A stretch of 63,984 bases of DNA, filler included, from Octopus bimaculoides (GCF_001194135.2; 6 parts of 6 records of this genome joined end to end with filler, not necessarily neighbours in it), one strand, 5' to 3'; shown: positions 41,641 to 58,797, counted from the whole stretch's first letter. The notes: a model not told the origin generated them from the letters alone. Numbers and translations: made by a program.

Positions 41641-42249
41641 CACCTTTACTTTACTTTATCCCGATGGAAATAGTTAATCTATTTTATCGGCCCCGGAAAA
41701 GACGACAGGTAAAATCGGCCCCGTGATACTGGAACCCAGAACACAAAAAACAGATGTGAATATATACCGCCATGGCATTCAATTTAGCTTTTTCTTTTCC
41801 TCTACCTTTTTTTTTTATTTGTTTACATGGTTTTCTTGTACATCTGTTGTTTTCGTTTCTGTTTTCTTCATATCCTTCTTCCCCACTCCTCGTCCCTCCC
41901 CCCNNNNNNNNNNNNNNNNNNNNNNNNNNNNNNNNNNNNNNNNNNNNTTAATTAATTAANNNNNNNNNNNNNNNNNNNNNNNNNNNNNNNNNNNNNNNNN
42001 NNNATGCCATCGATCGAGTTTTGTTTTAGCTGTCATCTACTTAGGCTTCTAATCCCATTTTAGTCAAACAACTACGCTTTACTCTTTTACGCTTTTACTT
42101 GTTTCAGTTATTTGACTGCGGCCATGCTGGAGCACCAACAATGCATTGTAAGCATTGCGATAAGAATTATCTGCAGAGTATGCTTCGTCTCTCTGATACC
42201 TTGTTATTATTATTATTATTATTGTTGTTGTTGTTGTTGCTGTTAAAAT

Positions 42250-42440
42250 GGTAAGGTGGCAAAATCGGTAGTACTAGTGACGAAATGTTTAGCGGTTTTT
42301 TGTCCGCCTTTACTTTCTGAGTTTAAATTCCACCGAGGTCGACTCTGCCTTTCATCCTTTCGGGGTCCATAAATTAAGTACCAGTGAAACAGTAGAATCG
42401 ATGTAATCGACTAGTCCCCTTCCCCAAAATTTTCAGGGTC
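42250..42440 (+). mobile_element. SINE family B copy
   Basis: ttctgagtttaaattccaccgaggtcgac..cctttcatcctttcggggtc..taaattaagtaccagt. Confidence 0.8.
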
Positions 42441-42443
<3 letters not shown>

Positions 42444-42510
<67 letters not shown>

Positions 42511-42600
42511 CACCATCATCTTAATCATCAGTCATTATTATTGTTATCATTATTATTATTGTTATCATTATTGTTATCATTATTATTATTATTATTATTA

Positions 42601-42647
<47 letters not shown>
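42444..42647. repeat. (ATT)n microsatellite
   Basis: Direct inspection. Confidence 0.95.
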
Positions 42648-42649
<2 letters not shown>

Positions 42650-42873
42650 ACATTCATAAGGTAGTGGATTAGCAAATGCATCAGACGAAATTCATTACTG
42701 TATTGTAAGACTCCTCATTATGTTCATCCTTCTGCGTTCAGTAGTATGATATAGCAATCGAGAACTAACGTCTACTAACTATGCCCCATCACTGCAAAAC
42801 AATATATATTTGAGTTTATGTATGTGGATGTTGGAAATCATTATTGTTATTGTTGCTGTTATTGTTATTGTAG

Positions 42874-42988
42874 GCAGTGGCTGCTCTATTACACTACTTC
42901 CTTCTGACATCTCTCATGTGGATGGCTGTTATTGTATTTAAAACATATCAGTCACATTTTATCTTGAAGAGTTCAATTTTGGCCTGGG
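42874..42988 (+). CDS. Adhesion-type (7tm_2) GPCR exon, TM3 to start of TM4; may be a pseudogene
   Basis: ttattgtag acceptor and G|GTAAGT donor. Encodes AVAALLHYFLLTSLMWMAVIVFKTYQSHFILKSSILAW(G), which contains the LLHYF..W and WG signatures of adhesion GPCRs. Ends in phase 1, matching the next exon. Confidence 0.8.
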
Positions 42989-43513
42989 GTAAGTAGCTGA
43001 AACGAGATGTAATATTTATATGTACAGAATAAACATAAATTATAAAGAAACAGATTCTCAGGTTCGCCACAGGGCAACATAAGATTACTTTCATTTTCAA
43101 GCATATAGTTTCAGTCTAATCTTATCGCTAGAAAAAAGCTAAGAGTTATTCATTTTGTACTTTCACCCGATGCGGCAAGTAATTTGTGAAGTGGTGCGTG
43201 AGAGCGAGTTGTTGTTGTCTTTATACGATTGTGCAGAAGTTGCAGTAATTTTTAATTTTTGTTCACCTGTGAAACATATCGTTTATAGAATGCACGATAT
43301 ATACTAGTCGTACTGATTTCTAGAAGTGAAAGACGTAATGGTAAAAAGTGACATATGTATACATCAAAATAGATAGTGATTTCTTTTGAACGAGATATTT
43401 TGTCTCGAATAAAACATCGTCAACTAAATCGATCTGAATGTCACATATTTATGATTTTAAATATTGACTAATATCTACATATGTTTCTTCCTTTCTATAA
43501 ATGTCCTTGTCAG

Positions 43514-43592
43514 GTCTTCCAGCTGTCGTTGTCATAATTACTCTGGCAATTAACTACACAAACAATTACATCAGAATTGAACGTGCACAAGT
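43514..43592 (+). CDS. Adhesion-type GPCR exon, TM4-ECL2
   Basis: Polypyrimidine tract + CAG acceptor and GTAAGT donor. The 79 nt encode (G)LPAVVVIITLAINYTNNYIRIERAQ(V), joining the previous exon in frame as AWG-LPAVVV. Confidence 0.85.
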
Positions 43593-44165
43593 GTAAGTAT
43601 TTGTATGCTTTTTTTACCGAATTTTCTCTGCTCTCCACAACTAATATTTTGTGAAATTTCTTTATGATTTGAATAACGAAGNNNNNNNNNNNNNNNNNNN
43701 NNNNNNNNNNNNNNNNNNNNNNNNNNNNNNNNNNNNNNNNNNNNNNNNNNNNNNNNNNNNNNNNNNNNNNNNNNNNNNNNNATATATATATATATATATA
43801 TATATACAGAGAGAGAGAGAGTGAGAGAGAGTGAGAGAGAGAGATAATACACACATGCACACACATATTTGTATATGATGTAAGTTTACGTATAATATAT
43901 CAAACAGTGAAACAGGGCAAAGAAGAGGTATCGGGTCGGATTATTACATATTTGTACGAAAAAAGACTGAGAGACAAACATGGGGTGGGTTCACGTGCCT
44001 CAGAAATAAACCTGGATATCCTTCTGTCAAAGTACCAGGTCCTGACCACTGAGGTACAGACGCTAGGGCATATATGTTTACATAGACAGAGAGGTACACA
44101 CACACACACACACATACACACACAGACGCGCGCGCAAGCATAAGTTTATATTGGCGAATTGGGTA

Positions 44166-44200
<35 letters not shown>

Positions 44201-44204
44201 ACAT

Positions 44205-44380
44205 AAAAAGGTGATTGCTCCATCTTCACAGATGACTGTCGCCTCCTTGTGCTTCCTCTTTGTCAATGGTATTAATGGGTTTCCATTCATGACCTTTCAG
44301 ATGACTATTTAATCTCTCTGCCGATCTGCATTCTTTGGAGCAATGGCAATAGACGAATATTGTACCTTATTGTTCGCGTC
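44205..44380 (+). mobile_element. Possible CR1/L2 RT fragment
   Basis: CSIFTDDCRL (FADD-like) and LSADLHSLEQW; short and degenerate. Confidence 0.4.
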
Positions 44381-44394
44381 CACTCTTCCATCAC

Positions 44395-44572
44395 GGTAGG
44401 ACGGTCAGTAAATTCTCAGCAAAAACTGAATAGTACTGTATTACATCGGGACAGCCTTGCCACACCCTTTGTCACGCTGAATCTCTCTGAGAACTGCGTT
44501 AAGGACACACGTGTCTGTAGAGTGCTCAGCCACTTGCATCCTGATTTCGTGAGCAAGCTGTCCTGTTGATCG
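44395..44572 (+). mobile_element. SINE family C copy
   Basis: gagaactgcgttaaggacacacgtgtctgtagagtgctcagccacttgca. Confidence 0.8.
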
Positions 44573-44904
44573 TATTANNNNNNNNNNNNNNNNNNNNNNN
44601 NNNNNNNNNNNNNNNNNNNNNNNNNNNNNNNNNNNNNNNNNNNNNNNNNNNNNNNNNNNNNNNNNNNNNNNNNNNNNNNNNNNNNNNNNNNNNNNNNNNN
44701 NNNNNNNNNNNNNNNNNNNNNNNNNNNNNNNNNNNNNNNNNNNNNNNNNNNNNNNNNNNNNNNNNNNNNNNNNNNNNNNNNNNNNNNNNNNNNNNNNNNN
44801 NNNNNNNNNNNNNNNNNNNNNNNNNNNNNNNNNNNNNNNNNNNNNNNNNNNNNNNNNNNNNNNNNNNNNNNNNNNNNNNNNNNNNNNNNNNNNNNNNNNN
44901 NNNN

Positions 44905-44932
<28 letters not shown>

Positions 44933-44935
<3 letters not shown>

Positions 44936-45122
44936 TTATATATATGTTAAGGGTATTACTATACATAAATACCTCACGCCAGGAGGGACTCTTAAAGTCA
45001 AAACTACCATATTAAACACATTGTACCGGTACAAGGTGTTTATTATGGTAGTTTTTACTTTAAGAGTCCCTCCTAGCGTGAGTCATTTATGTATAGTAAT
45101 GCCCTTAATATATATATAAATA
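44933..45122. repeat. 190-bp loopless palindrome
   Basis: Two 95-nt arms centred on GTACC|GGTAC (45027/45028); 87 of 95 positions complementary by hand count. Confidence 0.95.
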
Positions 45123-45753
45123 AATATATTTAAAGGGAATAATTAATAAATTTTTCCCTTATGAGGTTTTTCACGCTAACTACTTCATAAATTCTTATAA
45201 AGATTTTATCCTAATTTTAAATCTTATATATTATATATATATATATTATATATGTATATATATAGTATATATATATATAATATATTACACACACACACTC
45301 ACACACACACACACACACACACTCACACACACACACCCACACACACATATATGAATAGAAGCGAATAAGACTTTGTGTCACAAAAGAGGCGGTTAGAGGT
45401 GAAATCTATTGAGAAACCCAATTAAAATTATGCACAATTCATAAAAATGCTTAGTAACTTCGATTGATTGAGAATAGTCAGATCCGGTTGACGGAGGTTT
45501 ATTTTTAAAAACATTATTTACATTTCTTTATTCTTGATGAAAGAACCGAAAGCACACCATCGGTGTAAGTATGAAATATATGACTAGCTCGACATCAGGT
45601 AAGTCTCTAGTTTTTTTTCTCACTCTATTCTTGTCATATGTCACAATTTTGATGTACTAATGGAAAGAGATGTCTTCTATTACGATTGACAGATTGATAT
45701 ATCCTTTACTCCGAAATTTAAGGCCTTGTACCTTTTGTAGAAAGGATTATTAC

Positions 45754-45807
<54 letters not shown>

Positions 45808-45839
45808 TATTATTATTATTATTATTATNNNNNNNNNNA

Positions 45840-45848
45840 ATAATAATA

Positions 45849-45884
<36 letters not shown>

Positions 45885-46385
45885 GCCTTTGCACAGCTTC
45901 TAACGCTGGAGATGTACTAGAGTGTCCGCTGTTCACTACTAGTGCTAATGTAACACCTCTTATTTTTCGAGCACCTTTCGGACTATTCGAGCAGTTCCAA
46001 GAGGTGCTGTTTTCTGCAAGTGCTCCACCCTTATTGCAGCCCATATTTGTTCTACGTACGTCTCGAGATTTTTGCTCACTGTTCCCAGGGCACCCACAAT
46101 TATTGTTACTACTGCTACCTTTTTCATCGACTACAACTGCTTAACTTCCAAGCTAACCTGTCATATCTCTCGACTTTTCTTTCTTCCTTATCGCATACCT
46201 TGTTGTCCGCTGGGCATGCTATGTCTATGATCCGGCATAGTTTGTTGTCTTTCTCAATTAAGACTATGTCTGGCTTCCTATTCTCTATCTCATGGTCGCA
46301 CTGAATCAAAAAATCCCATAGGATCTTTGCATTTCTATTTTCGACGATGCCTTCAGGTGTGTGGTCGTACCAAAAACATTGTTAT
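45840..46385 (-). mobile_element. R4/Dong-like LINE 3' end (restriction-like endonuclease)
   Basis: YDHTPEGIVENRNAKILWDF, IQCDHEIENRKPDIVLIEK..CRIIDIACP, IVGALGTVSK; ends in a (TAA)n tract. Confidence 0.85.
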
Positions 46386-46800
46386 TATCAAATTTATGCA
46401 TTTCTAATCAATTTGCAGATATTTGGTATCGAGTTGCAGATTTTTAACAATGCAGTTGGTGATTATTTGCTTTAGTTCTCGGACAAAATTTACAACTTAG
46501 AATAAAAGAATGAAATTATTATTTCATTCAGAAATTGATGAGCTTTGTTTTTAGTGATGACTTGAAATGGTAAATATTTTTTCTAACTGTATTTGCTTGA
46601 AGAAAACATACTTTTCTTTATATTAAGCAATTCATTATAATTATGTGCCTAAATAAAAACCATCGTTATAGATCAGCATTTCTCAACCTTGGACATTGAA
46701 AAAATTTATTTCGGCTCCCCTGTGTTGATGAAAAATTTAATCCAGCTTCCCATGTATCTGAGCTAGACTGGCCGGCCCATGACAAATCTAACAAAAGGGG

Positions 46801-46970
46801 GGACCCGCAGAACCACCAGCTCACGAACTGCATCTGAAAGTTGGCGCGCCAATCATGCTGCTAAGGAATTTAGATGCTCCAATAATGTGCAATGACACGC
46901 GGATGATTATCAAAAAATTGTGCTCCCGAGTTCTGTAGGCAACAATCTTGAATGAACCGGCCGCTGGGCT
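46801..46970 (+). mobile_element. Helitron PIF1-like helicase fragment 1
   Basis: PPAHELHLKVGAPIMLLRNLDAPIMCNDTRMIIKKL...ATIL. Confidence 0.8.
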
Positions 46971-47602
46971 TAATGATTGTATACTTGTCAAACGATGAAC
47001 GATGATTGCCGATGATATAGTCAGTTTTATTTATTGTAAATTCAGATAACATCAGCAATAATGAACATGAACAAGTTGCATCCTTCGATTTACATAACTT
47101 ACATTGGGAATCTACCTGACTGCGCTGACTACGAAAGTTAGTGAAACACTGAACCTTAACAATGGCATTCTGCGGCTCATATACCGGGTCTAACAAAAGA
47201 ATATAAAAGCAATGATTCGATAATTGTGATGATGATGACGCTGACGACGACGATAAAGACGCTGTTGACGAGGACGAAGATAGTGATGATGATGATGATT
47301 GTGAGGATAGGATGATGATGATGATGAGGAGGAGGAGGAGGAGGATGGTAAGGATTATCAGGATCAAGATGATGATCATTATAATGATGAAGATAAGCTA
47401 TAAATTTTCCAGTGGAGATTTTAAATGCACAAAATCCAAGTTTCGCGTATTATAATGTGCGAACGAAACCTCAGACTCCCGAAGAGTTTACTAAATAGAA
47501 CAGGAGCAACAATTAAAGAAACGTGCACCCATTTTTCTTTATGCAGCAGAAAGATTTACTAGCAACAGTTAAGAAGAAAAAGTCTTCATTTCACGAATTT
47601 AT

Positions 47603-47800
47603 TTGTCACATCGCGAGACAAATCTACTTTTTCAACATAATCGCAGACAGTTCCCCTTCATACTATTCTTTGTTATTATCATAAATAAAATTCATGGTCA
47701 GTGTTTTAACAGAGTGGGAGTACAGCTACGCGAACTCGTATTTAATACTGGGTGGTTACGTGTAGTTCTAAGTAAGACTAAAAATAAAGAGCACCAAGAT
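47603..47800 (+). mobile_element. Helitron PIF1-like helicase fragment 2 (C-terminal motifs)
   Basis: RRQFPFILFFVIIINKIHGQCFNRVGVQLRELVFNTGWLRVVLSK is a degenerate form of RRQFP..LAFAMTINKSQGQ..VG....VF.HGQLYVALSR. Confidence 0.75.
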
Positions 47801-48963
47801 GGACAGTTTTCCCTCCCATGTAACAAGAGCATCTCCTACATGAGGACCGTATATTCACTAAATATGCCCCATAAATGAGTCAATGTAGAATTGTAGACAA
47901 AAATATAAACACAACACACTTCTGAGGGAAAACAAGAAAGGCGGATTGTAAAAAATAACATTTCTATAGTTATATAACCATTATTTTGAGTGTATATTCA
48001 TGGGTTAGTGTACATCGTTTTGTTTCAGTCTATGTTTTGTGCTTTGACTGTGCAGCCATACACATCCTATGCGTGTACATGTACACATACAAACACTACA
48101 CTATACACACGCACACACACACATACACACATACACGCACGCATACATGTATGTGTATATACATGTCCATGCATATACACATAAAAGCCCTAATGTACAC
48201 ATATTTGTGTGCACATTCTGGTCGCATACATCCTATTGTGGAGTTTCACTTATTCAAAAAGTATTTTATATTATCCTTATAATTTGTGGAATTTTACGTA
48301 TCTTGCGCATATATTCTTTTGCATGTCTATTACATATTCTTACTCGTATCTGAATTTGCAAGGTTTTGAGATTGCTGAATGATAAACTGCAAAATTCGGA
48401 CACCAAAACTTTTGACAAATGCTTGTCAACCAGGTACACATACATGTAAATACAAAGTTTTAAGTGCATAAATAAAAAAATTTAAAAAAATAAAAAAATA
48501 AAATTTCGTGTAGTTTAAATATTAATGCAGTTATGCGTGTACAAAAACGTGTTACAATTTTCCCGAAGGTCGAACCCAACAGAGATAATTATACACGAGT
48601 CGTGCATATATAGGCTATCGGTGGTGGTGGTGGTGGGGGTCTGTCTTTGGGTAGATCTTTTTCCTGTGAACCTTCTCCAGTCCTCTCTGTACGAACTAAG
48701 AGACCCACATCCTGCCCTGCCAGCGTTAAGTAGATTACAAGAACAATGGCTACAATGACTAGACTTGGGATGAATATTAGTGGGGTTTCTCGTTGCCTTC
48801 TCAAAACAGGTGGGATTTAACTTCTATATGCAGAGAGCCAGAAAATATACGGTAAACCGTTTCTGCCGACGCACCAACGATTTAGCATTCGTGAGTGCAA
48901 CACTCTAGCCACTGAAGGCATATAGATTGAAAGATAGACTCTGTATGTGTGTATGTATGTGTG

Positions 48964-49002
<39 letters not shown>

Positions 49003-49364
49003 NNNNNNNNNNNNNNNNNNNNNNNNNNNNNNNNNNNNNNNNNNNNNNNNNNNNNNNNNNNNNNNNNNNNNNNNNNNNNNNNNNNNNNNNNNNNNNNNNN
49101 NNNNNNNNNNNNNNNNNNNNNNNNNNNNNNNNNNNNNNNNNNNNNNNNNNNNNNNNNNNNNNNNNNNNNNNNNNNNNNNNNNNNNNNNNNNNNNNNNNNN
49201 NNNNNNNNNNNNNNNNNNNNNNNNNNNNNNNNNNNNNNNNNNNNNNNNNNNNNNNNNNNNNNNNNNNNNNNNNNNNNNNNNNNNNNNNGCTAGCGATCTA
49301 TCCTAACGAAAAAACTTGTGGATTTCAGCAGTCCTACATGGCGAAATCTATATGCATACATACA

Positions 49365-49399
<35 letters not shown>

Positions 49400-49534
49400 G
49401 TGTGTGTGTGTATATATATATATATATCTCTATATGTATATATCTTGTCCCTTGTGTTGTATTGTCCTTTTCTGTTTTGTGTTCTGCTCCTGTGGCTAAT
49501 AACGAAATAACGAAAATATTTTTATTGTGAATGC

Positions 49535-49745
49535 GGTGAAATGACGAGTCTGTTAGCACGTCGGACAAATAGAAGTAGTGACATTTTGTCCGTCTTTACG
49601 GTTTGAGTTCAAAATCGCCGAGTTTGAATTAGTCTTTCATCCTTCTGGGATTGATGAGATGACAATATAGCACTGGGGGTCGAAGTAATTGACAAACACC
49701 TCCCCTAAAATTGCCGGCATTGTGACAAAATTAGAAATAATTATT
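49535..49745 (+). mobile_element. SINE family B copy (diverged)
   Basis: gttagcacgtcggacaaat...gtctttacggtttgagttcaaa...ctttcatccttc...actgggggtcga. Confidence 0.7.
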
Positions 49746-50899
49746 ATTAGGCATCACACATGACATCTAAGCTTGAAATATCGCTGGTAGTTTTCTCTAA
49801 ATTTACTTTCTTTATAGTATTTCCGAGAACTGAAATTGTAACTTTTGTTTTGCGGATGCATCCAGATTTCTACTGAAGATTCTCCAATCTCCAATGATGG
49901 AACTGGCATCAGCTTGTTCCGAGAATTTTTCCCATACATATCTTCTATTAATTTCTTTTCCTAAAAATTTAAATAGAGGAGTATTTTTAGGAGGAAATGT
50001 ATTTGCCTCACCACTTAGGTGGTACTTGAACGACCTGCCATAGTAGTCGGCCATACGAGGCAGTTGCCACTCCCATTGAAATCAGCAAAGAAACGACGAA
50101 CAATAAAACCCACAGCAGTAAATAACATCCGCGACGAAGACAACGACGACGACGACGACGACGATGACAATAACAACAACACTAATATTAGTGTGAACTA
50201 CGACTACTCCAACAACAACAACAACAACAACAACAGAGCTAACTAAACAACAGCAACGATGATAGTGTAATCAGCAGCAGCAATAAAGCTCTCAACAATG
50301 GCGCTGATAGTTTAAGCAGCAACAATAACAACAACAACAGTAACATAGACATCAGCAGCAGGTGCTGCAGTTAAGAAAATAGCAACAGTAACATGAAAAT
50401 AGAGCAATAATCTAATCTACACGGGCAGTAGCAGCAACAGCAGCTACAACAACAACGATGAAAATCTATAAAGAAAAGTCATTCTTCGCGAACGTCACAG
50501 ATCGGGGAAACGTATTATTACTTGAAGAATAAGTGGATATCACTACAAAGCACAGGAAAAATATCGTTCAGCCTGGTGTCATTTCACTCCCAGAAAGGGG
50601 AATGGTGTACACCATGAAAATAACAATAATCTATAAGAGCATCAATCGCCCAGAAACGAAGCTACAATTCCCTTCCCCAACCGAAATAGGAAAAAAAAAT
50701 TGGAAGATGTGTAGCGTTCCGTAGTGTATATCTTCCAAGGAATGCAACAGGGGACCGTGGTGGCCAACTGTAGCAATAAAGTGGATGTGCGTACGATGGA
50801 TGCAACGAACTGCACCTTCCTGCAGTTCGCGATGCTGCCCTTAGATATAGAACGTCATGTGACGAACTCAGGGTCACAAATGTACCCCCTCATAGGGAC

Positions 50900-51150
50900 C
50901 AGGTCAGAGAAATAGCTGCGATAAAGGATCAAGGGGAAATAGCATTAAATCAAACCCCTAACAATATACAAGAGTAATGGCAGTCCAAGTTTTGGTTGTT
51001 TCCAGAAGACGCAGCTAGCATACCAAACTTTTTTTTCTATTTCGGAGATTGCGGGGTAGATGCGGGTGGTCATAAAGGGTAGAAACCCCAGATGTCATAT
51101 TTGTGGCACACTAGATCACCTCAAAGATTTCTACTTCAAAGTGGTGAAAT
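50900..51150 (+). mobile_element. Possible decayed LINE ORF1 with a zinc knuckle
   Basis: VVIKGRNPRCHICGTLDHLK (CX2CX4H, last Cys missing) at about 51067-51125. Confidence 0.35.
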
Positions 51151-51869
51151 TGAAAGGAATGAATCGCCCCGCATCGCTGCTTCAAGCGCAACATCTACTG
51201 CAATTAAAAAGGTGGTAGCAGCACCCACCACAGCAACTATAAACCCAACAGCTTTCACTCAGGGAAAAGCGTGAAACAAGTCTCCTGAACACCTCCACAA
51301 ACCCGACCACCGCTAGCAACAGCAAACGATATGGAAGAAACTAAATGCAAATCCAGTCTACTCTTCGGATATAGAAGTGACCTCGGAAGTCACCAAAGTA
51401 CCCTAGTGGTTAAGGAGGGCTTGTGAAAATACTGACTTGACCCCTAAATCCTCAAAATTTGTGAGCACCAAGTGCAATAAGTTGGAAGACAGAGTGCCTA
51501 GTCTCATAAGCAAAGCGATAGAACAACAAATACAATACCCACAACAATAACAACTTCACCAACAGCAGGCAAACTTTAAAACAGCAACATCAATAACAGA
51601 AACAAACAACATTCTCAACAACAGTGAGAGTCACATCGGATGTTCGATGACTCGTACAAAGGCCTCGAAAAAGTGTTGTTAGACCTGGCCGGTAGGTGGC
51701 TGGTCTTGGATATGAGCAGTAGGGAAGGAAACAGTGGTTAGTGGAGAAGTGCAGCTTAAATTGTCCACGGTTTCAGATCATTAGCTCCTTAGAACTCAAA
51801 CTGGGGACCTTTATAGTTAACATAAACATCTATACATATAAATTTGACACGGGCGATTCTTTCATGCCT

Positions 51870-52620
51870 TGGGATTCACGGTCAAACGGCTGGGTGGAAC
51901 TGTGCGAAAAATTACACAGATGTGTAAAATGATCCGAGCTGGTGTAGACCAGAAGCACACGCATCAATGGCTACAGACCTCAGGGCAAAAGGTAGAGAGG
52001 GAAAGTTTTATCTTGGCTGACCAAGATCAGAGATTATTGACCCGAAACTATCAAGTCAACATGATGAAAAATAATGCAGACTCAAAGTGCCGATACTGCA
52101 ACGAAGGGATGGAAACAGTCGGCCACCTAATCTCTGGATGTAAGGTTTTAGCACCTGTAGAATGCAAATGAAGACATGACAGAGTTGGCCAATATCCACA
52201 TTGGATAATGTGTCGTCATTATAATATTAAATCTGCTGACAAATGGTACAAGCCCCACCCTTAGGCTGTAACTCCCAGTATGTACAGATCGCACCATCAA
52301 GGCAAATAATCCAGATATTGTTGTGAAAGACAAAAGCAATAGAGTATGTTTATTGATTGACATAAGCATACCCTGTGACCATAATATCTCGGCAAAAGAA
52401 TTTGATAAGCATAGAAAATGTAAAGATCTGCTAATCGAAATCGAAAAAATGTGACACCTCAAGACGGTCACAATACCAGTGATTGTAGGAGCACTTGGAA
52501 TGATCAAAAATGGAACTGCAAATTATTTAGGAATGGTCTCTGGCGTACTATACGCGCAGGAAGTGCAGAAGATTTTCTTAACCGGTACATTACACGTGTT
52601 GAGGAGTGCATTGTCGGCAT
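51870..52620 (+). mobile_element. R4/Dong-like LINE 3' portion (CCHC + restriction-like endonuclease)
   Basis: CRYCNEGMETVGHLISGC, RHDRVG, NNPDIVVKDK..CLLIDISIP, IPVIVGALGMI. Confidence 0.9.
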
Positions 52621-53025
52621 AAATTTTCTTTCCTTTTCCCCATTTATTTTATTTGTTTACTTTACTATTTTTTTTTCTTTTTCTCTCTGTCATTACATAC
52701 ATACACATGCACTCCGCATATATGTATAATGTGTGTGTGTGTGTCTGTGTTTGTGCGTGTGTAATCAGGGGCGATTTACGTTCTGTTTATCTTAGACATT
52801 ATCATTCATTAAAGCTATAGCTTATTATGTTTTCCACATTGGATTATCATTGAATTCAGTTTGGAAAGTTTAAATATGAAACTGAAAATGAAATCAAAGA
52901 TAAATCCATCTCATAGAACAGGGGACAATGCTTGTACTACGAAGAAACTTCAATAGAAAAGAAACGACATTGAAGTTTCTGATCTTTTATATTTTCTTCT
53001 TTTACAGATTAATCTACGTCTAAAA

Positions 53026-53207
53026 ATGTTTTATCAATTGAAATTGAGTTCTGTATTGGTACTCTTTATGAGATTATGTTTGGAGTCTCATGCTGCGTCA
53101 GACATTTGCAGCATATGCAAATGTCAATATTCTAAGACAGATATAGATTGCTCATCTCGGGGACTGACGTCGGTCCCACAACCCATTCCACCGAATGTTG
53201 AATCTTT
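53026..53207 (+). CDS. LRR-gene coding exon 1: signal peptide + LRRNT cap
   Basis: MFYQLKLSSVLVLFMRLCLESHA (signal-like), then CSICKC...IDCSSRGLTSVPQPIPPNVES(L). Acceptor ttttacag ends at 53007; GTAAGT donor at 53208, phase 2. Confidence 0.9.
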
Positions 53208-53773
53208 GTAAGTATTAGACAATTTCTACATATTTTCCACATTCAGTGGTTTAAATTCTCGTTAGTTATGTTCTTAAATAATACCTTATTTTTTTGACCT
53301 CAGTTTTCAAACATGATGTTATGTTGGAGTAAAAAGTAAACTGTTTCTCTGTACATGTTGATTCAAACGGAGTCTATAATTTACAATATTGCACACGAAG
53401 ATGGTATCAGACCAATATCTGAACCAACATTACATCAAAATTCCTTAAGACAATATTCAGGGAACGGAAAGTATGAAAACTGTTGGTGTTAGCATAACGT
53501 GTTGCATATATTGTTGTTATGAAGGAGAGTATAAAATGGAAGAAATATTCTGATAGATATAATTCTAAATGGTACTACTGGAAATCAAAATACTGTTCTG
53601 TAGTTCTACAAAAGAAAACCAATAATGGATCATAATTCATTCTAATGAGAAATAATGTTCACGATCCCGTGATTGATGTAAAGCATACCACACGTTCCTG
53701 TGTACGTTTTTACTGTAGGGTGGACAATTTGAATTAGGGATGGAATGCGTGGTGTCGGTCAGTTAACGACGTG

Positions 53774-53925
53774 AGTTGGGTAAGTGAAGAGTTAGGCGTT
53801 GTGAAGAGTTGGGCAATGTAAAGAGCTGGGTGATATGAAGAGTTGAGCGATGAGAGTTGAGATTTGAGTAGAGCTGTAAATGAGAGGTAAGTGATGTGAA
53901 GATTTGGCGATGAGAGGTAAGCAAT
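53774..53925. repeat. Degenerate 14-17-bp tandem repeat (GTGAAGAGTTGGGCGAT-like)
   Basis: Four clear 17-mers at about 53784-53851, then shorter variants. Confidence 0.7.
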
Positions 53926-54369
53926 GTGAGCAGTTTATCCCAGATCAGGTGATGGGGAACTACATTCAGTGTCAAGATGGTAACGAACACAGTCGGAGAA
54001 AAGTTGGCGATGTGAACAGGGAGGAGAAAAGTCAGTGTGAATTTGGTAACGAAGACATTCTGTGAAAAGATGCGATGTGACCAGTCGAAGTGAACAGGGT
54101 GACGAAGAACGATATCACGCAAGACATCCGGCCGGCTTCTACTAATTCTTCCCCTCTAAGTAAGTTGGCTTGCTGGGCAGGCTTGCGGTTTCCCAGCTGC
54201 TGGCTTGACTGTTGGAGTTGTGTTGGTGTTAGGATGCCACATTTCGCAACATTATTTCCTAAATTGAAGATGTTTATAGTTACAGTTGTATTGATAATAG
54301 TTGATTTAGTATTAGTATGACAGTTAAGCATGTCTATATTATGTTTACAATCAAATGTGATACTGTTAG

Positions 54370-55077
54370 ACTAATTTGTTGATAAAGAGTGTCAAATGTA
54401 TTTGGAGTGACAATTGTCGGGCCGCGTTTGAGAAAGTAAAAGCCATACTCATGAGTTCTCCAGTTTTGATAGCACCAGATTTTGGGAAACCATTAAAGGT
54501 TTCTATTGATGCAAATGACGCTGGTGTCGGCGGTGTTCTGTTTTAATCAGATGCAAAGGGTGTTGATCATCCTGTTTGTTATTACTCAACCAAATTTGGC
54601 AAACACCAGCGAAATTATTCAACCATTGAGAAAGAAATCCTTGCTTTGTTATTGTCATTGCAACATTTTGACGTATATTTGGGAACCACCAAGTATTCCA
54701 TTGAAGTGTTCACCGACCACAATCCGCTGACTTTTCTGCGCAAGGAGAACAAAAATCAGAGATTAATGAGATGGGGTTTATCTTTGCAAGAATTTAATCT
54801 CAATATTCAACATATTAGAGGTAAAACAATGTCATTGCGGAAGCACTATGTCGAGTCAGCTGATTGTGACAGGATGTTACATGTATTTGTGTGACTTATG
54901 CAGTTCTCGTATTTTGCCATTGTAAATAAGAAAGTTTTCACTGCGTTTAACTTTCTTCCTTTAAGGAGGAGAATGTTATGTATATCTATAATATAATTAA
55001 ATGAGAGAACTTACAATGTTTTCTGAATGTGGCGAGATAAACGTTTGTCAACGACCTTTTGGTAGAATTGAAATGAC

Positions 55078-55119
<42 letters not shown>

Positions 55120-55414
55120 GAAGTGAGCATGGGACAAGATAGGTATTCTTGTTTACTTCCTGTTAAAAAGGTGAGTTAAGAAGACAGGAGAGCTTGGCGT
55201 GGATGGTACAAAATACGAGAGAAAGCTGCATACGGTTCGGACCGCTCACCTCCTACCTTTAAACAATTGAATACTGGACATTAATTTCTTTGGGTATTAT
55301 ACCTGTTGTCACATAATCCCAATCTTTGAATATTAATTCCCTGTTTGAACAATTCCTGTTGTTGCGATCAGAAATTTACCCCTTTTATGCATAAGAATTT
55401 GCCTGATCGTAACA
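54370..55414 (+). mobile_element. 5'-truncated Gypsy LTR retrotransposon: connection/RNase H, PPT and 3' LTR (Gmr1-like order)
   Basis: AFEKVKAIL..PVL.APDF, DANDAGVGGVL, NYSTIEKE, FTDHNPL, RLMRW, NVIAEALCR, stop at 54861-54863. Purine tract AAGGAGGAGAA at 54963-54973; LTR TGTTATG(54974)...CGTAACA(55414). Confidence 0.9.
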
Positions 55415-55534
55415 CTTCTTTTTCCTCATCAACAGTTTCAAATTCCCACCCATACCATCGTCTAATTGTTGAGTAAAAAATCCGTTACAAATATGTTCTA
55501 TACATTTTCTTATTAACTCCATTTTATGTTCCAG

Positions 55535-55606
55535 AAACTTGAATTTTAATAATATCAAGGAAATCCAATCAGTCACCTTCAAAAATCTGTCAAGTTTAAT
55601 AACTCT
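55535..55606 (+). CDS. LRR exon 2 (72 nt)
   Basis: ttccag acceptor and GTAAG donor, phase 2-2; NLNFNNIKEIQSVTFKNLSSLIT(L). Confidence 0.9.
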
Positions 55607-56187
55607 GTAAGTTGAACTGGTTTTATTTTTAAGTATTTCATTGACGATATATCTCGAAATCTATATCGTGCCACTCTTCATTGTAAGCACCGGCACTAGT
55701 CTTTCCAAAGATGTGGTTTATTGTTTGTGATATGGGGTATATGAGAGCGTGATAGATCAGGAGAACAATTTGGTGCTTGCATTGTTATGTCTACATGTAT
55801 GTGTAAACTCTGTCTTGGCTCAAAATGCATTAATGTTTGTGAATATATGTGAGTGCCTGTTCTTCAGGCTTGGTGTAAATGAGTGCGTGACAATTAACGG
55901 TAACAGTTAGTGCAAACATCATTATATGTATATAGAAGCTGTTTGTCACTGTGTGCCTGTGAATGTGTGCCTGCAAGTGTATCGAAATGTATATCATGTA
56001 TGCTGTTTTCGTCTACATCACAACTGATTAGCAACCTCTTCTTCTTCTTCTTCTTCTTCTTCTTCTTCTTCTTCTTCTTCTTCTTCTTCTTCTTCTTCTT
56101 CTTCTTCTCCTCCTCCTCCTCCCCCTCCTCCTCCTCCCTCTTCAAAATAAAGATGTTTATCTACCTTCTCCTCTACTTATCTTGCAG

Positions 56188-56259
56188 ATATTTGGATAAT
56201 AATAATATCGTAAAACTTGAAGCAGCTGCTTTCCGTGATCTTCCCAGTTTGATAACACT
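56188..56259 (+). CDS. LRR exon 3 (72 nt)
   Basis: cttgcag acceptor and GTAAGT donor; YLDNNNIVKLEAAAFRDLPSLIT(L). Confidence 0.92.
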
Positions 56260-56496
56260 GTAAGTCTGTTAATAATATGAATATTGATAATGGATTGCGA
56301 AATCTTTAAAACCTTCCCCTTCTTTCTCTCTCCACGTTTTTGTCCTTCCCTACATCCTCACTCGCTTTCTATGCTGTTCTGTGATACTTTGTGAGTGTCT
56401 GTAAATGTGTGTGTCTGCGCGTGTGTAGCTGAATGTGTTCGCATGTATACTTTCTGTTCTGGCCAATCCGGCTTTATCTTCTTATCCACTCTGGCT

Positions 56497-56568
<72 letters not shown>
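56497..56568. repeat. (CTA)24 microsatellite in an LRR intron; related (CTT)n/(CTA)n tracts at 56038-56140, 56982-57095 and 57468-57520
   Basis: Direct inspection. Confidence 0.95.
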
Positions 56569-56981
56569 GTAAATTCTTGGTTTTCTTCCTCTCCCTTTTT
56601 CCTTTATTTCTTATTCTTGCTACCTTCCTTCTTTTCGTTTTTATGAGCATCCCGATATTCCTTTACTTTCTTCTTCTTCTTCTTATTATTTTTTCTGTGT
56701 TATTCAATTCTTTTTAAATGGTTTCTTCGTATTTCGTTTTCCCTCTATTATTCGCTAGTTTATTTTTCGCCTCAATCCTCTGTTTTTTCTTCTTCTTCTC
56801 CTCCCTTCTTCATTTTCTTCTTCGTTTTGTGTTTCTCTATTTTATCCTATTTTTTTGTTTGTATTTCATATAATCTACTTCCTCCTTCTGTTCCTTTTTC
56901 TTCTCTTCTGATTTTGATACAGTGGTTGTTGTTCCTCTTTCTAATGTAGCCACCTCATCCGTTCTTTCCGTGCTTGTCTTT

Positions 56982-57028
<47 letters not shown>

Positions 57029-57030
57029 GC

Positions 57031-57062
<32 letters not shown>

Positions 57063-57140
57063 CTTCTTCTTCTTCTTCTTCTTCTTCTTCTTCTTCAACA
57101 TAATGAATTTTGTTTACCCTCTCCTCTTTTTATCTTACAG

Positions 57141-57212
57141 ATTTTTGAATGATAATGATATCAGAACAATTGAAGTAGGGGCCATCCAAGATCTGTCCAG
57201 GTTGACAACACT
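57141..57212 (+). CDS. LRR exon 4 (72 nt)
   Basis: cttacag acceptor and GTAAGT donor; FLNDNDIRTIEVGAIQDLSRLTT(L). Confidence 0.92.
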
Positions 57213-57800
57213 GTAAGTTGGAAAAGTCTTGTTTATAATATGAAATTGACAATGAATTACTAAATCTTTAAAACCTTCCCATTCTCTTTCGCTCCACGTC
57301 CTTGCCTCTTCCTACATGCTCTCTTTCTCTCTCTCATTTTCAATTTCTTCTTTCTCATTTTCTTTCCCTTTCTCATTTTCGTCTTTAGTTTTCTTATTTT
57401 GTTTTTCAACTTTCTGTTTGTCCTGTTTCATCGTTTCATTCTAGTTTCCGCTCTTTTTCTCTTCAATTTTCTTCTTCTTCTTCTTCTTCTTCTTCTTCTT
57501 CTTCTTCTTCTTCTTCTTCTAGATCATTTTCACTTCTTTCCTTGTTGTCGATGTTGTTCATCTTCTTCGTTTTGTGTTTTATCTTAATTTTTGCTTTTGT
57601 ATTTTACGTCACCTACTTCTTCCTTGTTTTCCTTTCTATTTTCTTCTGCCTTTGATGTAGTGTTTGTTGCTCCTCTTTCTTTTCATCTTCTAATGTAGCC
57701 CCTTCATTCTATCCCTTCGTATTCTACTACTTTCTCATCGTCTCCTTCGCCTCCTTCAACATCCTGATATTGTCTACTTTCTCCAATTCTTATTTTACAG

Positions 57801-57872
57801 ATATTTGCATAATAATAATATCGGAAAACTTGTAGCAAAAGCCCTCCATAACCTGCCAAGTATGAGCACACT
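57801..57872 (+). CDS. LRR exon 5 (72 nt)
   Basis: ttttacag acceptor and GTAAGT donor; YLHNNNIGKLVAKALHNLPSMST(L). Confidence 0.9.
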
Positions 57873-58797
57873 GTAAGTTGAATGAGTCTTGATAATATTT
57901 CATTGACAATATATATTACTAAATTTTAAACTCTTCCCGTTCTTTTTCGCTCCAAGTCCTTGTCCATCCCAACATGTTCACACTCTTTCGATAGAACTGC
58001 GTGAGTCTTTTCGCGTGCCTGTAAATATGTGTGTCTGTGCATGTATTTACTTGAGTATGTGTTCGCATGTATAATTTCTCTTCCGGTCAACCCTGCTTCA
58101 CCTTTTTATCACTCCAGCTCTTCTTCCTTTACGCCCCTCCTCCTCCTCCACTCCCCTCCTCCTCTACTCCCTTCTTCTTCTTCTTCNNNNNNNNNNNNNN
58201 NNNNNNNNNNNNNNNNNNNNNNNNNNNNNNTTAATTAATTAANNNNNNNNNNNNNNNNNNNNNNNNNNNNNNNNNNNNNNNNNNNNGTTCAGCGTCACAG
58301 GACGGGATAAAGGTTTGGGAATATTCGGGGAAGCATAATAACATCTTCCACTTTCGTATTCAGCTCACCTAATCCCGATATTTTTTATTGATAGGTTTTG
58401 AAAGAAGACTACAAAAGTATGGCCATACAGCGCATACGCATACGTCCACGGAAGCATACATTGTCCAATGTATACGCTTGCCCGCGCGCATGCACGTACC
58501 CGTTCTCGCTCAAACACACACATACACACACATATGCAACGCACACATATGCAACGCACACGCTCGTTTTCTTTAACGAACGTGAAATAAAAGAAGTAGT
58601 GATATTCAATAGTTATTGTAGAATTCGCGTGTTATCAAAATGTGATATAATTTCAGATAAATTTCTTTATTAGCCACGCACGACCGAACACAGAACGGAC
58701 AATACAATGTAGAATTTTTCTTTTCGAAAACGATCAAAAGGGACTTGTACACAAGGAGATAATCTCGGATATTAACATTATGTTATGTTCATATAAA

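What the first reader, a model, noticed from the sequence alone, without database searches (positions are those of the whole stretch)
42874..57872. Possible tandem cluster of LRR-bearing adhesion GPCR genes
A 7tm_2 gene remnant is followed about 9.4 kb downstream, on the same strand, by a new signal peptide + LRRNT + LRR array. If the downstream gene ends in GAIN/7TM beyond the window, the two are head-to-tail paralogues of an LRR-adhesion-GPCR family, with one copy decaying and the other expanding its ligand-binding array. This resembles birth-and-death receptor clusters in immunity or cell recognition. Only co-orientation and proximity are observed; the link is hypothetical.
Basis: inference. 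Interest (0 to 1): 0.7.

Follow-up and report, generated by a model that had tools for sequence, protein, structure and literature searches.

The report
Octopus LRR adhesion-GPCR cluster junction
This stretch of Octopus bimaculoides DNA holds two membrane-helix exons of one adhesion GPCR and the start of a giant leucine-rich-repeat gene of the same family; the family is an already published octopus-specific expansion, and the "decaying copy" look is largely produced by assembly gaps.

Summary
Exons 42874-42988 and 43514-43592 (+) encode TM3 and TM4 of an adhesion GPCR and match NCBI model XP_052833999.1 exactly. About 9.4 kb downstream on the same strand lie a signal-peptide/LRRNT exon (53026-53207) and four 72-nt LRR exons.

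The piece is Octopus bimaculoides chromosome CM046629.1. Both parts belong to an octopus-specific family built as LRR, LRRCT, three-finger-like module, HRM-like module, GAIN/GPS and 7TM. More than 60 annotated proteins carry it in three Octopus species. Ritschard et al. 2019 published it as a tandemly clustered expansion.

The LRR gene is annotated as two models: 805 aa (61 + 31x24 aa) and 784 aa. The gapless O. vulgaris counterpart continues into GAIN/GPS and a complete 7TM.

"One copy decaying" is weakly supported. The only visible lesion is a 30-nt in-frame deletion in TM3. The missing TM5-7 exon coincides with a 100-N gap, where alignment with O. vulgaris stops. The 7TM block and the LRR block match complementary parts of one O. 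vulgaris gene. So two tandem genes, or one gene with mis-ordered scaffolds, cannot be told apart.

This is an ordinary member of a known family.

The parts
42874..42988 (+). Coding exon for TM3 and intracellular loop 2 of an adhesion GPCR. It starts in phase 0 and ends in phase 1. It carries a 30-nt in-frame deletion relative to the O. vulgaris counterpart, removing VEALHVCLAA.
   Evidence: AG acceptor and G|GTAAGT donor. PDB hits are all adhesion GPCRs. Family profile 32.7 bits. 100% match to XP_052833999.1. The DNA alignment shows a clean 30-nt gap between GCTGT direct repeats.
43514..43592 (+). Coding exon for TM4 and the start of extracellular loop 2 (GLPAVVVIITLAINYTNNYIRIERAQ + GT). The GTAAGT donor is intact. 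The NCBI model reads through it into a TAA stop.
   Evidence: Sequence. Family profile 27.6 bits. tblastn to 10 family members. O. vulgaris P0065 has the same IRIEHAQV|CWL junction.
43682..43781 (.). 100-N gap, the conventional length for a gap of unknown size. Alignment with both O. vulgaris copies ends here. The TM5-7 exon expected downstream is absent from the sequenced DNA.
   Evidence: L002 versus L006 and L007 alignments stop at window 43680. After the gap, only dispersed repeats match. The 100-N convention is my own knowledge of the AGP format.
43782..53025 (.). Repeat-rich spacer between the two coding parts. It holds microsatellites, a SINE-like repeat (44436-44575), a LINE 3' end (45746-46381, minus strand), a Pif1-helicase fragment (46792-46935) and a LINE with zf-RVT (about 50000-52700, plus strand). 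It contains three further N gaps. No TM5-7 exon was detected.
   Evidence: Pfam hits on the fragments. Repeats recur in other loci. Profile and tblastn searches for TM5-7 were negative apart from a 3.9-bit hit at 48231-48407.
53026..53207 (+). First coding exon of the LRR gene: ATG, signal peptide, LRRNT cysteine knot and the start of LRR1. It ends in phase 2.
   Evidence: Sequence. It coincides with the start of the annotated 805-aa gene. 79% identical to O. vulgaris P0086 and 74% to the O. sinensis P0001/P0003/P0004 models. 78% nucleotide identity to O. sinensis L001 over 52731-53752.
54370..54891 (+). Gypsy-type retrotransposon fragment (reverse transcriptase / RNase H) inside intron 1 of the LRR gene. 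It is not part of the gene.
   Evidence: Pfam RT_RNaseH E 6.8e-31 and RT_RNaseH_2 E 6e-28.
55535..55606 (+). LRR cassette exon 1: 72 nt, phase 2 at both ends, peptide NLNFNNIKEIQSVTFKNLSSLIT.
   Evidence: AG...GTAAGT flanks and open frame. Part of the LRR_8 hit.
56188..56259 (+). LRR cassette exon 2: 72 nt, peptide YLDNNNIVKLEAAAFRDLPSLIT.
57141..57212 (+). LRR cassette exon 3: 72 nt, peptide FLNDNDIRTIEVGAIQDLSRLTT.
57801..57872 (+). LRR cassette exon 4: 72 nt, peptide YLHNNNIGKLVAKALHNLPSMST. The gene runs on past the end of the piece.
   Evidence: The annotated gene continues to record position 10,410,492.

Best explanation
The piece is a junction inside the octopus-specific cluster of LRR-type adhesion GPCR genes, on O. 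bimaculoides chromosome CM046629.1 (record position = window + 10,304,858).

Family members are built as: signal peptide, LRRNT, a variable run of LRRs with one 72-nt exon each, LRRCT, a three-finger (Ly6-like) cysteine module, one to three SEA/HRM-like modules, a GAIN domain with a GPS site, and a 7tm_2 domain.

The left part of the piece holds the TM3 and TM4 exons of such a receptor. Its GAIN, GPS (CSCNHL|TSFALLM) and TM2 exons lie just upstream of the piece.

The right part is the first coding exon and the first four LRR cassette exons of a very large gene, more than 115 kb. NCBI annotates it as two models: 805 aa (61 + 31 LRR exons), then 784 aa (14 LRRs, LRRCT, three-finger module, HRM-like modules).

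The inferred product is a cell-surface receptor. The LRR arc binds a ligand. The GAIN domain cleaves itself at the GPS site and exposes a tethered agonist, and the 7TM domain signals through G proteins. This mechanism is inferred from the family, not shown here.

The 'remnant' look of the 7TM part comes mainly from the assembly. TM1 falls in an N gap. The sequence ends at an unknown-size gap 90 bp after TM4, where the TM5-7 exon would follow.

I cannot decide whether the 7TM block belongs to an upstream neighbour (a true tandem pair) or is the mis-ordered or collapsed 3' half of the LRR gene itself. I rate these about even.
For: Identity of the piece: it matches CM046629.1 with 0 mismatches in 11,593 bases.

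7TM part: see the scores in the observation check. A composite of the GAIN, GPS, TM2, TM3 and TM4 exons passes Pfam GPS (55.5 bits) and 7tm_2 (41.7 bits, profile positions 28-141).

Family:
- 67 hits at E <= 1e-10, nearly all Octopus proteins, many carrying LRR_8 + GPS + 7tm_2.
- Full-length examples are P0031, P0037 and P0049.
- The expansion, with LRRs in some members and tandem co-location, is published (PMC6408891).

LRR gene:
- The gene table gives an 805-aa product starting at window 53026 and ending 183 bp before P0070.
- 805 = 61 + 31x24.
- 22 further 72-nt LRR exons lie in L005.
- L005 46300-72512 is colinear with the O. vulgaris P0041 gene (L007 688-45165). That gene continues into GAIN, GPS, TM1-4 and a TM5-7 exon.

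Assembly:
- TM1 is expected about 1.26 kb after the GPS exon, exactly where N run L002 6178-7094 lies.
- In paralogue P0071, TM5-7 is a single 393-nt exon. In O. vulgaris it lies 2.45 kb after TM4.
- Colinear alignment ends at the 100-N gaps at window 43682 and L005 72514.
- A misplaced duplicate contig sits between two other 100-N gaps in L005.
Against: The 30-nt deletion in TM3 is real in the assembled sequence. It removes ten residues that every relative examined keeps, apart from a 2-residue-shorter TM3 in P0071. So the upstream copy may indeed be defective.

No TM5-7 exon was found anywhere in the 9.2 kb after the gap, nor in any O. bimaculoides locus fetched.

NCBI built no protein model over the GAIN/GPS exons upstream.

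The GAIN/7TM end of the LRR gene was not found in the O. bimaculoides assembly. Its receptor nature therefore rests on orthology and family resemblance.

The O. vulgaris model P0086, which links this exon type to 7tm_2, is itself messy: it lacks GPS and TM1 and has a frame-shifted tail.
Confidence: 0.7

Rival explanations
1. One gene, wrong order. The GAIN-to-TM4 block that ends at window 43681 is the 3' half of the same gene that starts at 53026. Hi-C/Chicago scaffolding placed it about 10 kb upstream of exon 1 instead of after the HRM exon about 125 kb downstream. Alternatively, it is a collapsed consensus of near-identical 3' halves of several paralogues.
For: - The two O. bimaculoides blocks match complementary, non-overlapping stretches of a single O. 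vulgaris gene: L005 to L007 45165, and L002 from about L007 48.8 kb to 60986.
- Both colinear runs end at 100-N gaps.
- No LRR gene start lies within 10 kb downstream of the 7TM exons in either gapless O. vulgaris copy.
- Window 43782-53025 does not match those O. vulgaris downstream flanks.
- In O. vulgaris, the 3' halves of two paralogues are 92-96% identical. That similarity would invite collapse in a short-read assembly.
- L005 holds an evident misplaced duplicate contig between 100-N gaps.
Against: - The DNA upstream of L002 could not be fetched, so it is unknown whether the 7TM block has its own HRM and LRR exons.
- The TM2 motif NLRKL matches the other O. vulgaris paralogue (P0065) rather than P0041. 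This is weak evidence, because the O. vulgaris 3' halves are homogenised.
- O. vulgaris has several same-strand copies, so tandem neighbours are expected anyway.
Confidence: 0.4
2. One reading: two true head-to-tail paralogues. The upstream one is a decaying pseudogene (TM3 deletion, loss of TM5-7). The downstream one has expanded its LRR array.
For: - The 30-nt deletion in TM3 is absent from the O. vulgaris counterpart and from all relatives.
- No TM5-7 exon was found.
- There is a very weak TM6/7-like stretch with a stop at 48231-48407, on the right strand and in the right order (3.9 bits).
- NCBI models only 78 aa here.
- The downstream gene is annotated with about 45 LRR exons, against 2-15 LRRs in full-length relatives.
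Against: - The deletion is in frame, and the splice sites of both exons are intact.
- The GAIN, GPS and TM2 exons are open.
- The truncation point coincides with an unknown-size gap and with the end of synteny.
- The 48231-48407 hit is at noise level among other spurious hits.
- LRR exon counts in this gap-ridden region may be inflated by duplicated contigs.
Confidence: 0.25
3. The LRR gene is not a GPCR at all. It encodes a secreted or single-pass LRR protein of the Slit, TLR or LGR type, as the NCBI names suggest ('toll-like receptor 5', 'LRRC4-like', 'slit-like').
For: - The annotated products (805 aa and 784 aa in O. bimaculoides; 157/133 aa in O. sinensis) contain no GAIN or 7TM.
- No GAIN/7TM exons lie in the 82 kb of L005.
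Against: - Each of these models ends by reading through an LRR-exon donor (CT|G TAA). Their lengths are exactly 61 + n x 24 aa.
- A fifth LRR exon lies beyond the annotated end in L001.
- P0070 carries the family's LRRCT, three-finger and HRM-like modules, and is colinear with an O. vulgaris gene that continues into GAIN/7TM.
- No TIR, 7tm_1 or Slit EGF/LamG domain was seen.
- NCBI splits other family members in the same way: a 251-aa LRR model sits next to P0071 in L004.
Confidence: 0.06

Closest known systems
Octopus-specific adhesion GPCR expansion ('group 3' of Ritschard et al. 2019, Proc Biol Sci, PMC6408891)
   Same: Adhesion GPCRs with GPS and an adhesion-type 7TM, confined to octopuses. 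Some members carry LRRs (5 of 22 sequences). [quoted passage not shown] The proteins found here are O. bimaculoides, O. vulgaris and O. sinensis 'ADGRG6-like' proteins with LRR_8 + GPS + 7tm_2.
   Different: I did not check the paper's gene list for this locus. The paper does not describe the 72-nt LRR cassette arrays, the split gene models or the giant gene size seen here.
Vertebrate ADGRA2/ADGRA3 (GPR124/GPR125)
   Same: Overall order: N-terminal LRRs with LRRCT, then an HRM-like module, GAIN/GPS and 7tm_2. Several family members hit Pfam GAIN_ADGRA3 (PF26588).
   Different: No Ig domain. A three-finger (Ly6-like) cysteine module and SEA/HRM-like repeats take its place (weak Toxin_TOLIP hit). 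There are far more LRRs. Orthology was not tested.
Vertebrate ADGRG subfamily (ADGRG3, G6, G2)
   Same: These are the best solved-structure matches for the TM3 exon, and the source of the NCBI names.
   Different: ADGRG receptors have no LRR ectodomain. The similarity is confined to the 7TM core and is modest (E 0.0045 for 39 aa).
LGR / glycoprotein-hormone receptor genes (class A)
   Same: One LRR per roughly 72-nt exon, so that repeats can be added or skipped in frame. This is from my own knowledge of FSHR/LHR/LGR gene structure, not tested here.
   Different: LGRs end in a 7tm_1 domain without GAIN/GPS. Every relative of this gene that has a membrane domain has 7tm_2.

Membership tests
Adhesion GPCR (class B2): 7TM-bearing unit, window 42874-43592 plus upstream exons | Seven-helix 7tm_2 domain | tested here: inconclusive
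   TM2, TM3 and TM4 are present. The composite scores 41.7 bits on Pfam 7tm_2 (cut-off 20.6), but only over profile positions 28-141 of 250. TM1 falls in an N gap, and TM5-7 is not in the assembled sequence. TM3 lacks 10 residues.
Adhesion GPCR (class B2): 7TM-bearing unit | GAIN domain with a GPS autoproteolysis motif directly before TM1 | tested here: met
   Outside the piece, at L002 4773-4925...CSCNHLTSFALLM. Pfam GPS 55.5 bits against a cut-off of 22.5. GAIN subdomain exons lie at L002 2163-2378 and 3840-3953. Cleavage itself is not testable here.
Adhesion GPCR (class B2): LRR gene starting at 53026 | The same transcript carries GAIN/GPS and 7tm_2 | tested here: inconclusive
   Not found in 82 kb of L005; the colinear run ends at a 100-N gap after the HRM-like exon. 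The O. vulgaris counterpart (L007) continues into GAIN, GPS and TM1-7. O. vulgaris P0086, with a 79% identical first exon, has LRR + GAIN + 7tm_2 in one model.
LRR ectodomain with N-terminal cap | Tandem LxxLxLxxNxI repeats preceded by an LRRNT cysteine knot and a signal peptide | tested here: met
   LRR_8 E 6.5e-23. LRRNT scores 22.4 bits, just under its 25.8 cut-off, but the CxxCxC...C pattern is present and conserved in relatives. The signal peptide is inferred from the hydrophobic leader; no predictor was run.
Octopus-specific aGPCR expansion (Ritschard 2019, group 3) | Octopus-only clade of adhesion GPCRs, some with LRRs, in tandem clusters | tested here: met
   67 hits at E <= 1e-10, all Octopus apart from one unnamed Logan-assembly protein and one whitefly LRR protein. 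Several members lie on the same chromosome and strand. Presence of this locus in the paper's own list was not checked.
LGR (class A LRR-GPCR) | 7tm_1 domain after the LRR ectodomain | tested here: not met
   No 7tm_1 in the piece or in any relative. Relatives with membrane domains carry 7tm_2.
Toll-like receptor | Single transmembrane helix and a cytoplasmic TIR domain after the LRRs | tested here: not met
   P0070, which NCBI names 'toll-like receptor 5', has LRRs followed by the family's LRRCT, three-finger and HRM-like modules and no TIR.

The most novel reading that the evidence does not exclude
The long arrays of 72-nt, phase-symmetrical LRR exons (4 in the piece, about 45 annotated for this gene) may be used as cassettes. 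Alternative splicing would then give one adhesion GPCR gene many ectodomains of different length and surface, a Dscam-like or VLR-like way of diversifying recognition in octopus nerve cord, suckers or skin. Any subset of these exons splices in frame. The O. sinensis isoforms X1-X3 differ exactly by skipping single LRR exons. Annotation names run up to 'isoform X13'.
Probability: 0.25. Interest if true: 0.75.

Novelty: new member of a known kind. Interest (0 to 1): 0.3.

Why it matters
The locus adds little new, because the family and its tandem expansion in octopuses are published and both parts are already annotated at NCBI.

Its practical value is as a caution. In the O. bimaculoides chromosome assembly, these giant repeat-built genes are broken at unknown-size gaps, split into several misnamed models ('TLR5', 'LRRC4-like', 'ADGRG3-like', 'slit-like') and possibly mis-ordered. 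Counts of genes, pseudogenes and LRR-bearing members in this expansion are therefore unreliable.

If the LRR cassette arrays are combinatorially spliced, this would be a second large recognition-diversity system in octopus neurons, alongside the protocadherins.

Tried and rejected
- Pfam on the 39-aa TM3 exon alone gave nothing.
- Regular-expression motifs for TM5-7 and the Stachel found nothing beyond TM3.
- A TM6/7-like stretch at 48231-48407 (E 0.015 by tblastn, 3.9 bits by family profile, one stop) was judged noise. Other clearly spurious hits score similarly.
- An apparent colinear match after the gap (44406-44575 to L006 46256-46427) turned out to be a dispersed repeat present in four other loci.
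- O. sinensis contig L001 has no 7TM exon in the 9.3 kb upstream of its first exon. It neither supports nor excludes the head-to-tail spacing.
- No signal/LRRNT exon lies within 10 kb downstream of the 7TM exons in L003, L004, L006 or L007.
- Look-ups of P0002, P0085 and P0087 found no record.
- The P0086 locus was too long for its DNA to be returned.
- P0019, on a 2.3-kb unplaced contig, was considered as the missing TM5-7 piece. It was rejected because it has its own, different TM3.

Full report
WHAT THE PIECE IS

The piece 42004-58186 is AT-rich, microsatellite-laden animal DNA. It is identical, with 0 mismatches in 11,593 overlapping bases, to Octopus bimaculoides chromosome CM046629.1 of assembly GCA_001194135.2. 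Window position + 10,304,858 gives the record position. The piece begins directly after a 1,544-N gap.

THE 7TM PART

An exon with an AG acceptor and a G|GTAAGT donor lies at 42874-42988. It reads AVAALLHYFLLTSLMWMAVIVFKTYQSHFILKSSILAWG.
- Against all solved structures, its nine hits are all adhesion GPCRs (ADGRG3, G6, G2, G5, L4, G4). They align at TM3 and intracellular loop 2, and every alignment needs a 10-residue gap in the query.
- An exhaustive profile-free search of 1.84 billion proteins found a 78-aa protein that contains the exon exactly, and about a dozen relatives at 68-77% identity.
- The 78-aa protein is XP_052833999.1, 'adhesion G protein-coupled receptor G3-like' of O. bimaculoides.
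- It also contains a second exon of the piece, 43514-43592. This reads GLPAVVVIITLAINYTNNYIRIERAQ(V), is TM4, and has an intact GTAAGT donor that the model reads through into a TAA.
- A profile built from 25 family members scores the two exons 32.7 and 27.6 bits. Nothing else in the piece, on either strand, scores above 4 bits.

Upstream of the piece, in the same record (locus L002), lie open exons for the GAIN domain, the GPS motif (CSCNHLTSFALLM) and TM2. Put together with TM3 and TM4, they pass the Pfam thresholds for GPS and 7tm_2.

THE LRR PART

At 53026 an ATG opens a 182-nt exon: MFYQLKLSSVLVLFMRLCLESHAASDICSICKCQYSKTDIDCSSRGLTSVPQPIPPNVES. This is a hydrophobic leader followed by an LRRNT-type cysteine knot.

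Four exons of exactly 72 nt follow at 55535, 56188, 57141 and 57801. Each is open, each is flanked by AG and GTAAGT, and each encodes one LRR. All introns are in phase 2. The joined peptide hits LRR_8 at E 6.5e-23.

The public gene table puts the start of an 805-residue product exactly at 53026. That gene ends 52.6 kb later, 183 bp before the next model, P0070 (784 aa, named 'toll-like receptor 5').
- 805 = 61 + 31x24. The model is therefore the first exon plus 31 LRR exons, and it stops only because reading through a donor (CT|GTAAGT) gives Leu-stop.
- The O. sinensis relatives found first (157 and 133 aa, 'LRRC4-like') are built the same way: 61 + 4x24 and 61 + 3x24.
- On their contig a fifth LRR exon lies beyond the annotated end.
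- P0070 begins inside an intron. It carries 14 more LRRs, an LRRCT, a cysteine-rich three-finger-like module and two SEA/HRM-like modules.

THE FAMILY

A search with the O. vulgaris relative P0012 returned 67 proteins at E <= 1e-10. Nearly all are from O. vulgaris, O. sinensis and O. bimaculoides. Many combine LRR_8, GPS, GAIN_ADGRA3 and 7tm_2.

Full-length examples are P0031 (1022 aa), P0037 (1091 aa) and P0049 (1298 aa). They read: signal peptide, LRRNT, 2 to about 15 LRRs, LRRCT, three-finger-like module, HRM-like module, GAIN/GPS, 7TM.

The first exon of the window's LRR gene is 79% identical to the N-terminus of O. vulgaris P0086. That gene spans 119 kb, and its model carries LRR, GAIN and 7tm_2. 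The same exon is 44-48% identical to P0037 and P0031.

This is the octopus-specific adhesion GPCR expansion described by Ritschard et al. 2019. Their 'group 3' has LRRs in 5 of 22 sequences, tandem co-location on scaffolds, and expression in axial nerve cord, suckers and skin (PMC6408891). No 7tm_1, TIR or Slit-type domain was seen, so the LGR, Toll and Slit readings fail.

NCBI often splits these genes. In L004 a 251-aa LRR model sits directly in front of P0071, which is an HRM-GAIN-7TM model.

IS THE UPSTREAM COPY DECAYING?

Two gapless O. vulgaris loci carry the closest relatives: L006 (P0065) and L007 (P0041). Both have a complete exon series. TM1 lies 1.26 kb after the GPS exon, TM3 has 49 residues, TM4 follows, and a single TM5-7 exon lies 2.3-2.45 kb after TM4.

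In O. bimaculoides:
- TM1 would fall exactly in the N run L002 6178-7094.
- TM3 lacks 30 nt (VEALHVCLAA). The deletion is clean, in frame and lies between GCTGT direct repeats. The exon and its flanks are otherwise about 93% identical to O. vulgaris.
- TM4 shares even the unusual IRIE(H/R)AQV junction with O. vulgaris.
- No TM5-7 exon exists in the sequenced DNA.

However, colinear alignment of L002 with both O. vulgaris loci (71-82% identity) runs up to window 43680 and stops exactly at the 100-N gap 43682-43781. Only dispersed repeats match after it. A run of 100 N is the conventional way of writing a gap of unknown size (my knowledge of the AGP format). The visible truncation therefore cannot be separated from the assembly. 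The one solid lesion is the in-frame TM3 deletion.

ARE THESE TWO GENES OR ONE?

The Ly6-to-HRM part of the LRR gene (L005 46300-72512) is colinear with L007 688-45165 and ends at another 100-N gap. The GAIN-to-TM4 block (L002 599-16787) is colinear with L007 49433-60986. So the two O. bimaculoides blocks are complementary, non-overlapping parts of one O. vulgaris gene, but in the assembly the 3' block sits in front of the 5' block.

L005 also contains a small duplicate contig between two 100-N gaps. Joins in this region are therefore not trustworthy.

In O. vulgaris, the 3' halves of the two paralogues are 92-96% identical over more than 25 kb, while their ectodomain halves are only 72-78% identical. 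That pattern would make a short-read assembly collapse or misplace the 3' half.

Against this, O. vulgaris has several same-strand copies, and more LRR exons follow on the same strand in L005. True tandem neighbours are therefore also expected. I could not fetch the DNA upstream of L002 to see whether the 7TM block has its own ectodomain exons. I rate 'one mis-ordered gene' and 'two neighbouring genes' about even, and 'upstream copy truly decaying' at about one in four.

HOW IT PROBABLY WORKS

This is inferred from the family, not shown here. The product would be a surface receptor whose curved LRR array binds a ligand or partner cell. Its GAIN domain cleaves itself at HL|T and holds a tethered agonist (TSFALLM...). 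Its 7TM domain couples to G proteins.

The LRR exons are all 72 nt and phase-symmetrical, so any subset splices in frame. Predicted O. sinensis isoforms differ by skipping single LRR exons. Whether this is used to diversify the receptor is unknown.

VERDICT

The family assignment and the cluster idea are supported. The decaying copy and the 9.4-kb head-to-tail spacing are not established. The locus is an ordinary, already annotated member of a published octopus-specific expansion, sitting in a poorly assembled region.

Noticed in passing
L006 31280-56744 versus L007 49413-74796 (O. vulgaris OX597842.1): Two paralogous LRR adhesion GPCR genes lie about 330 kb apart. They are 92-96% identical from mid-GAIN through TM1-7 and at least 7 kb of 3' flank, but only 72-78% identical in the three-finger/HRM part. 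This looks like recent duplication or gene conversion of the signalling half only.
   Followed up: partly
L005 52634-53193 and 47076-47571: Both stretches match the same O. vulgaris segment (L007 1271-1835). The second copy sits between two 100-N gaps, so it is probably a misplaced or haplotype contig in the O. bimaculoides assembly.
   Followed up: partly
window 53026 onward; L005 1-42880; L001 9296-36089: NCBI gene models of 133, 157 and 805 aa all equal 61 + n x 24 aa. They end by reading through an LRR-exon donor (CT|G TAA). The names 'LRRC4-like', 'toll-like receptor 5', 'slit-like', 'chaoptin' and 'decorin-like' are given to fragments of this one family.
   Followed up: yes
L005 53929-62636 and 63342-72512; P0041: The SEA/HRM-like module is duplicated in tandem inside the gene: two copies in O. 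bimaculoides P0070 and three in O. vulgaris P0041.
   Followed up: partly
window 54370-54891 (+): Gypsy-type RT/RNase H fragment inside intron 1 of the LRR gene (RT_RNaseH E 6.8e-31).
   Followed up: yes
window 45746-46381 (-), 46792-46935 (+), about 50000-52700 (+): The spacer is built of transposon debris: a LINE 3' end that recurs in L001, L003 and L004 at 79-87% identity, a Pif1-helicase 2B-domain fragment, and a LINE tail with a zf-RVT motif.
   Followed up: partly
window 42254-42412 and 44436-44575: Two short dispersed repeats, SINE-like, occur several times in every octopus locus fetched. One of them mimicked synteny across the gap.
   Followed up: yes
window 56030-56120, 56500-56570, 56990-57100, 57490-57530: Long pyrimidine-rich microsatellites (poly-T, CTT/TTC runs) sit in the introns just upstream of the LRR exons. 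The exon-plus-intron units are 67-76% alike across the array, which is consistent with growth by unequal crossing-over.
   Followed up: no
window 48231-48407 (+): Weak resemblance to the TM6-TM7 region of the family (E 0.015, 3.9 bits, one stop), on the right strand and in the right order. Probably chance, but it could be a badly decayed exon.
   Followed up: partly
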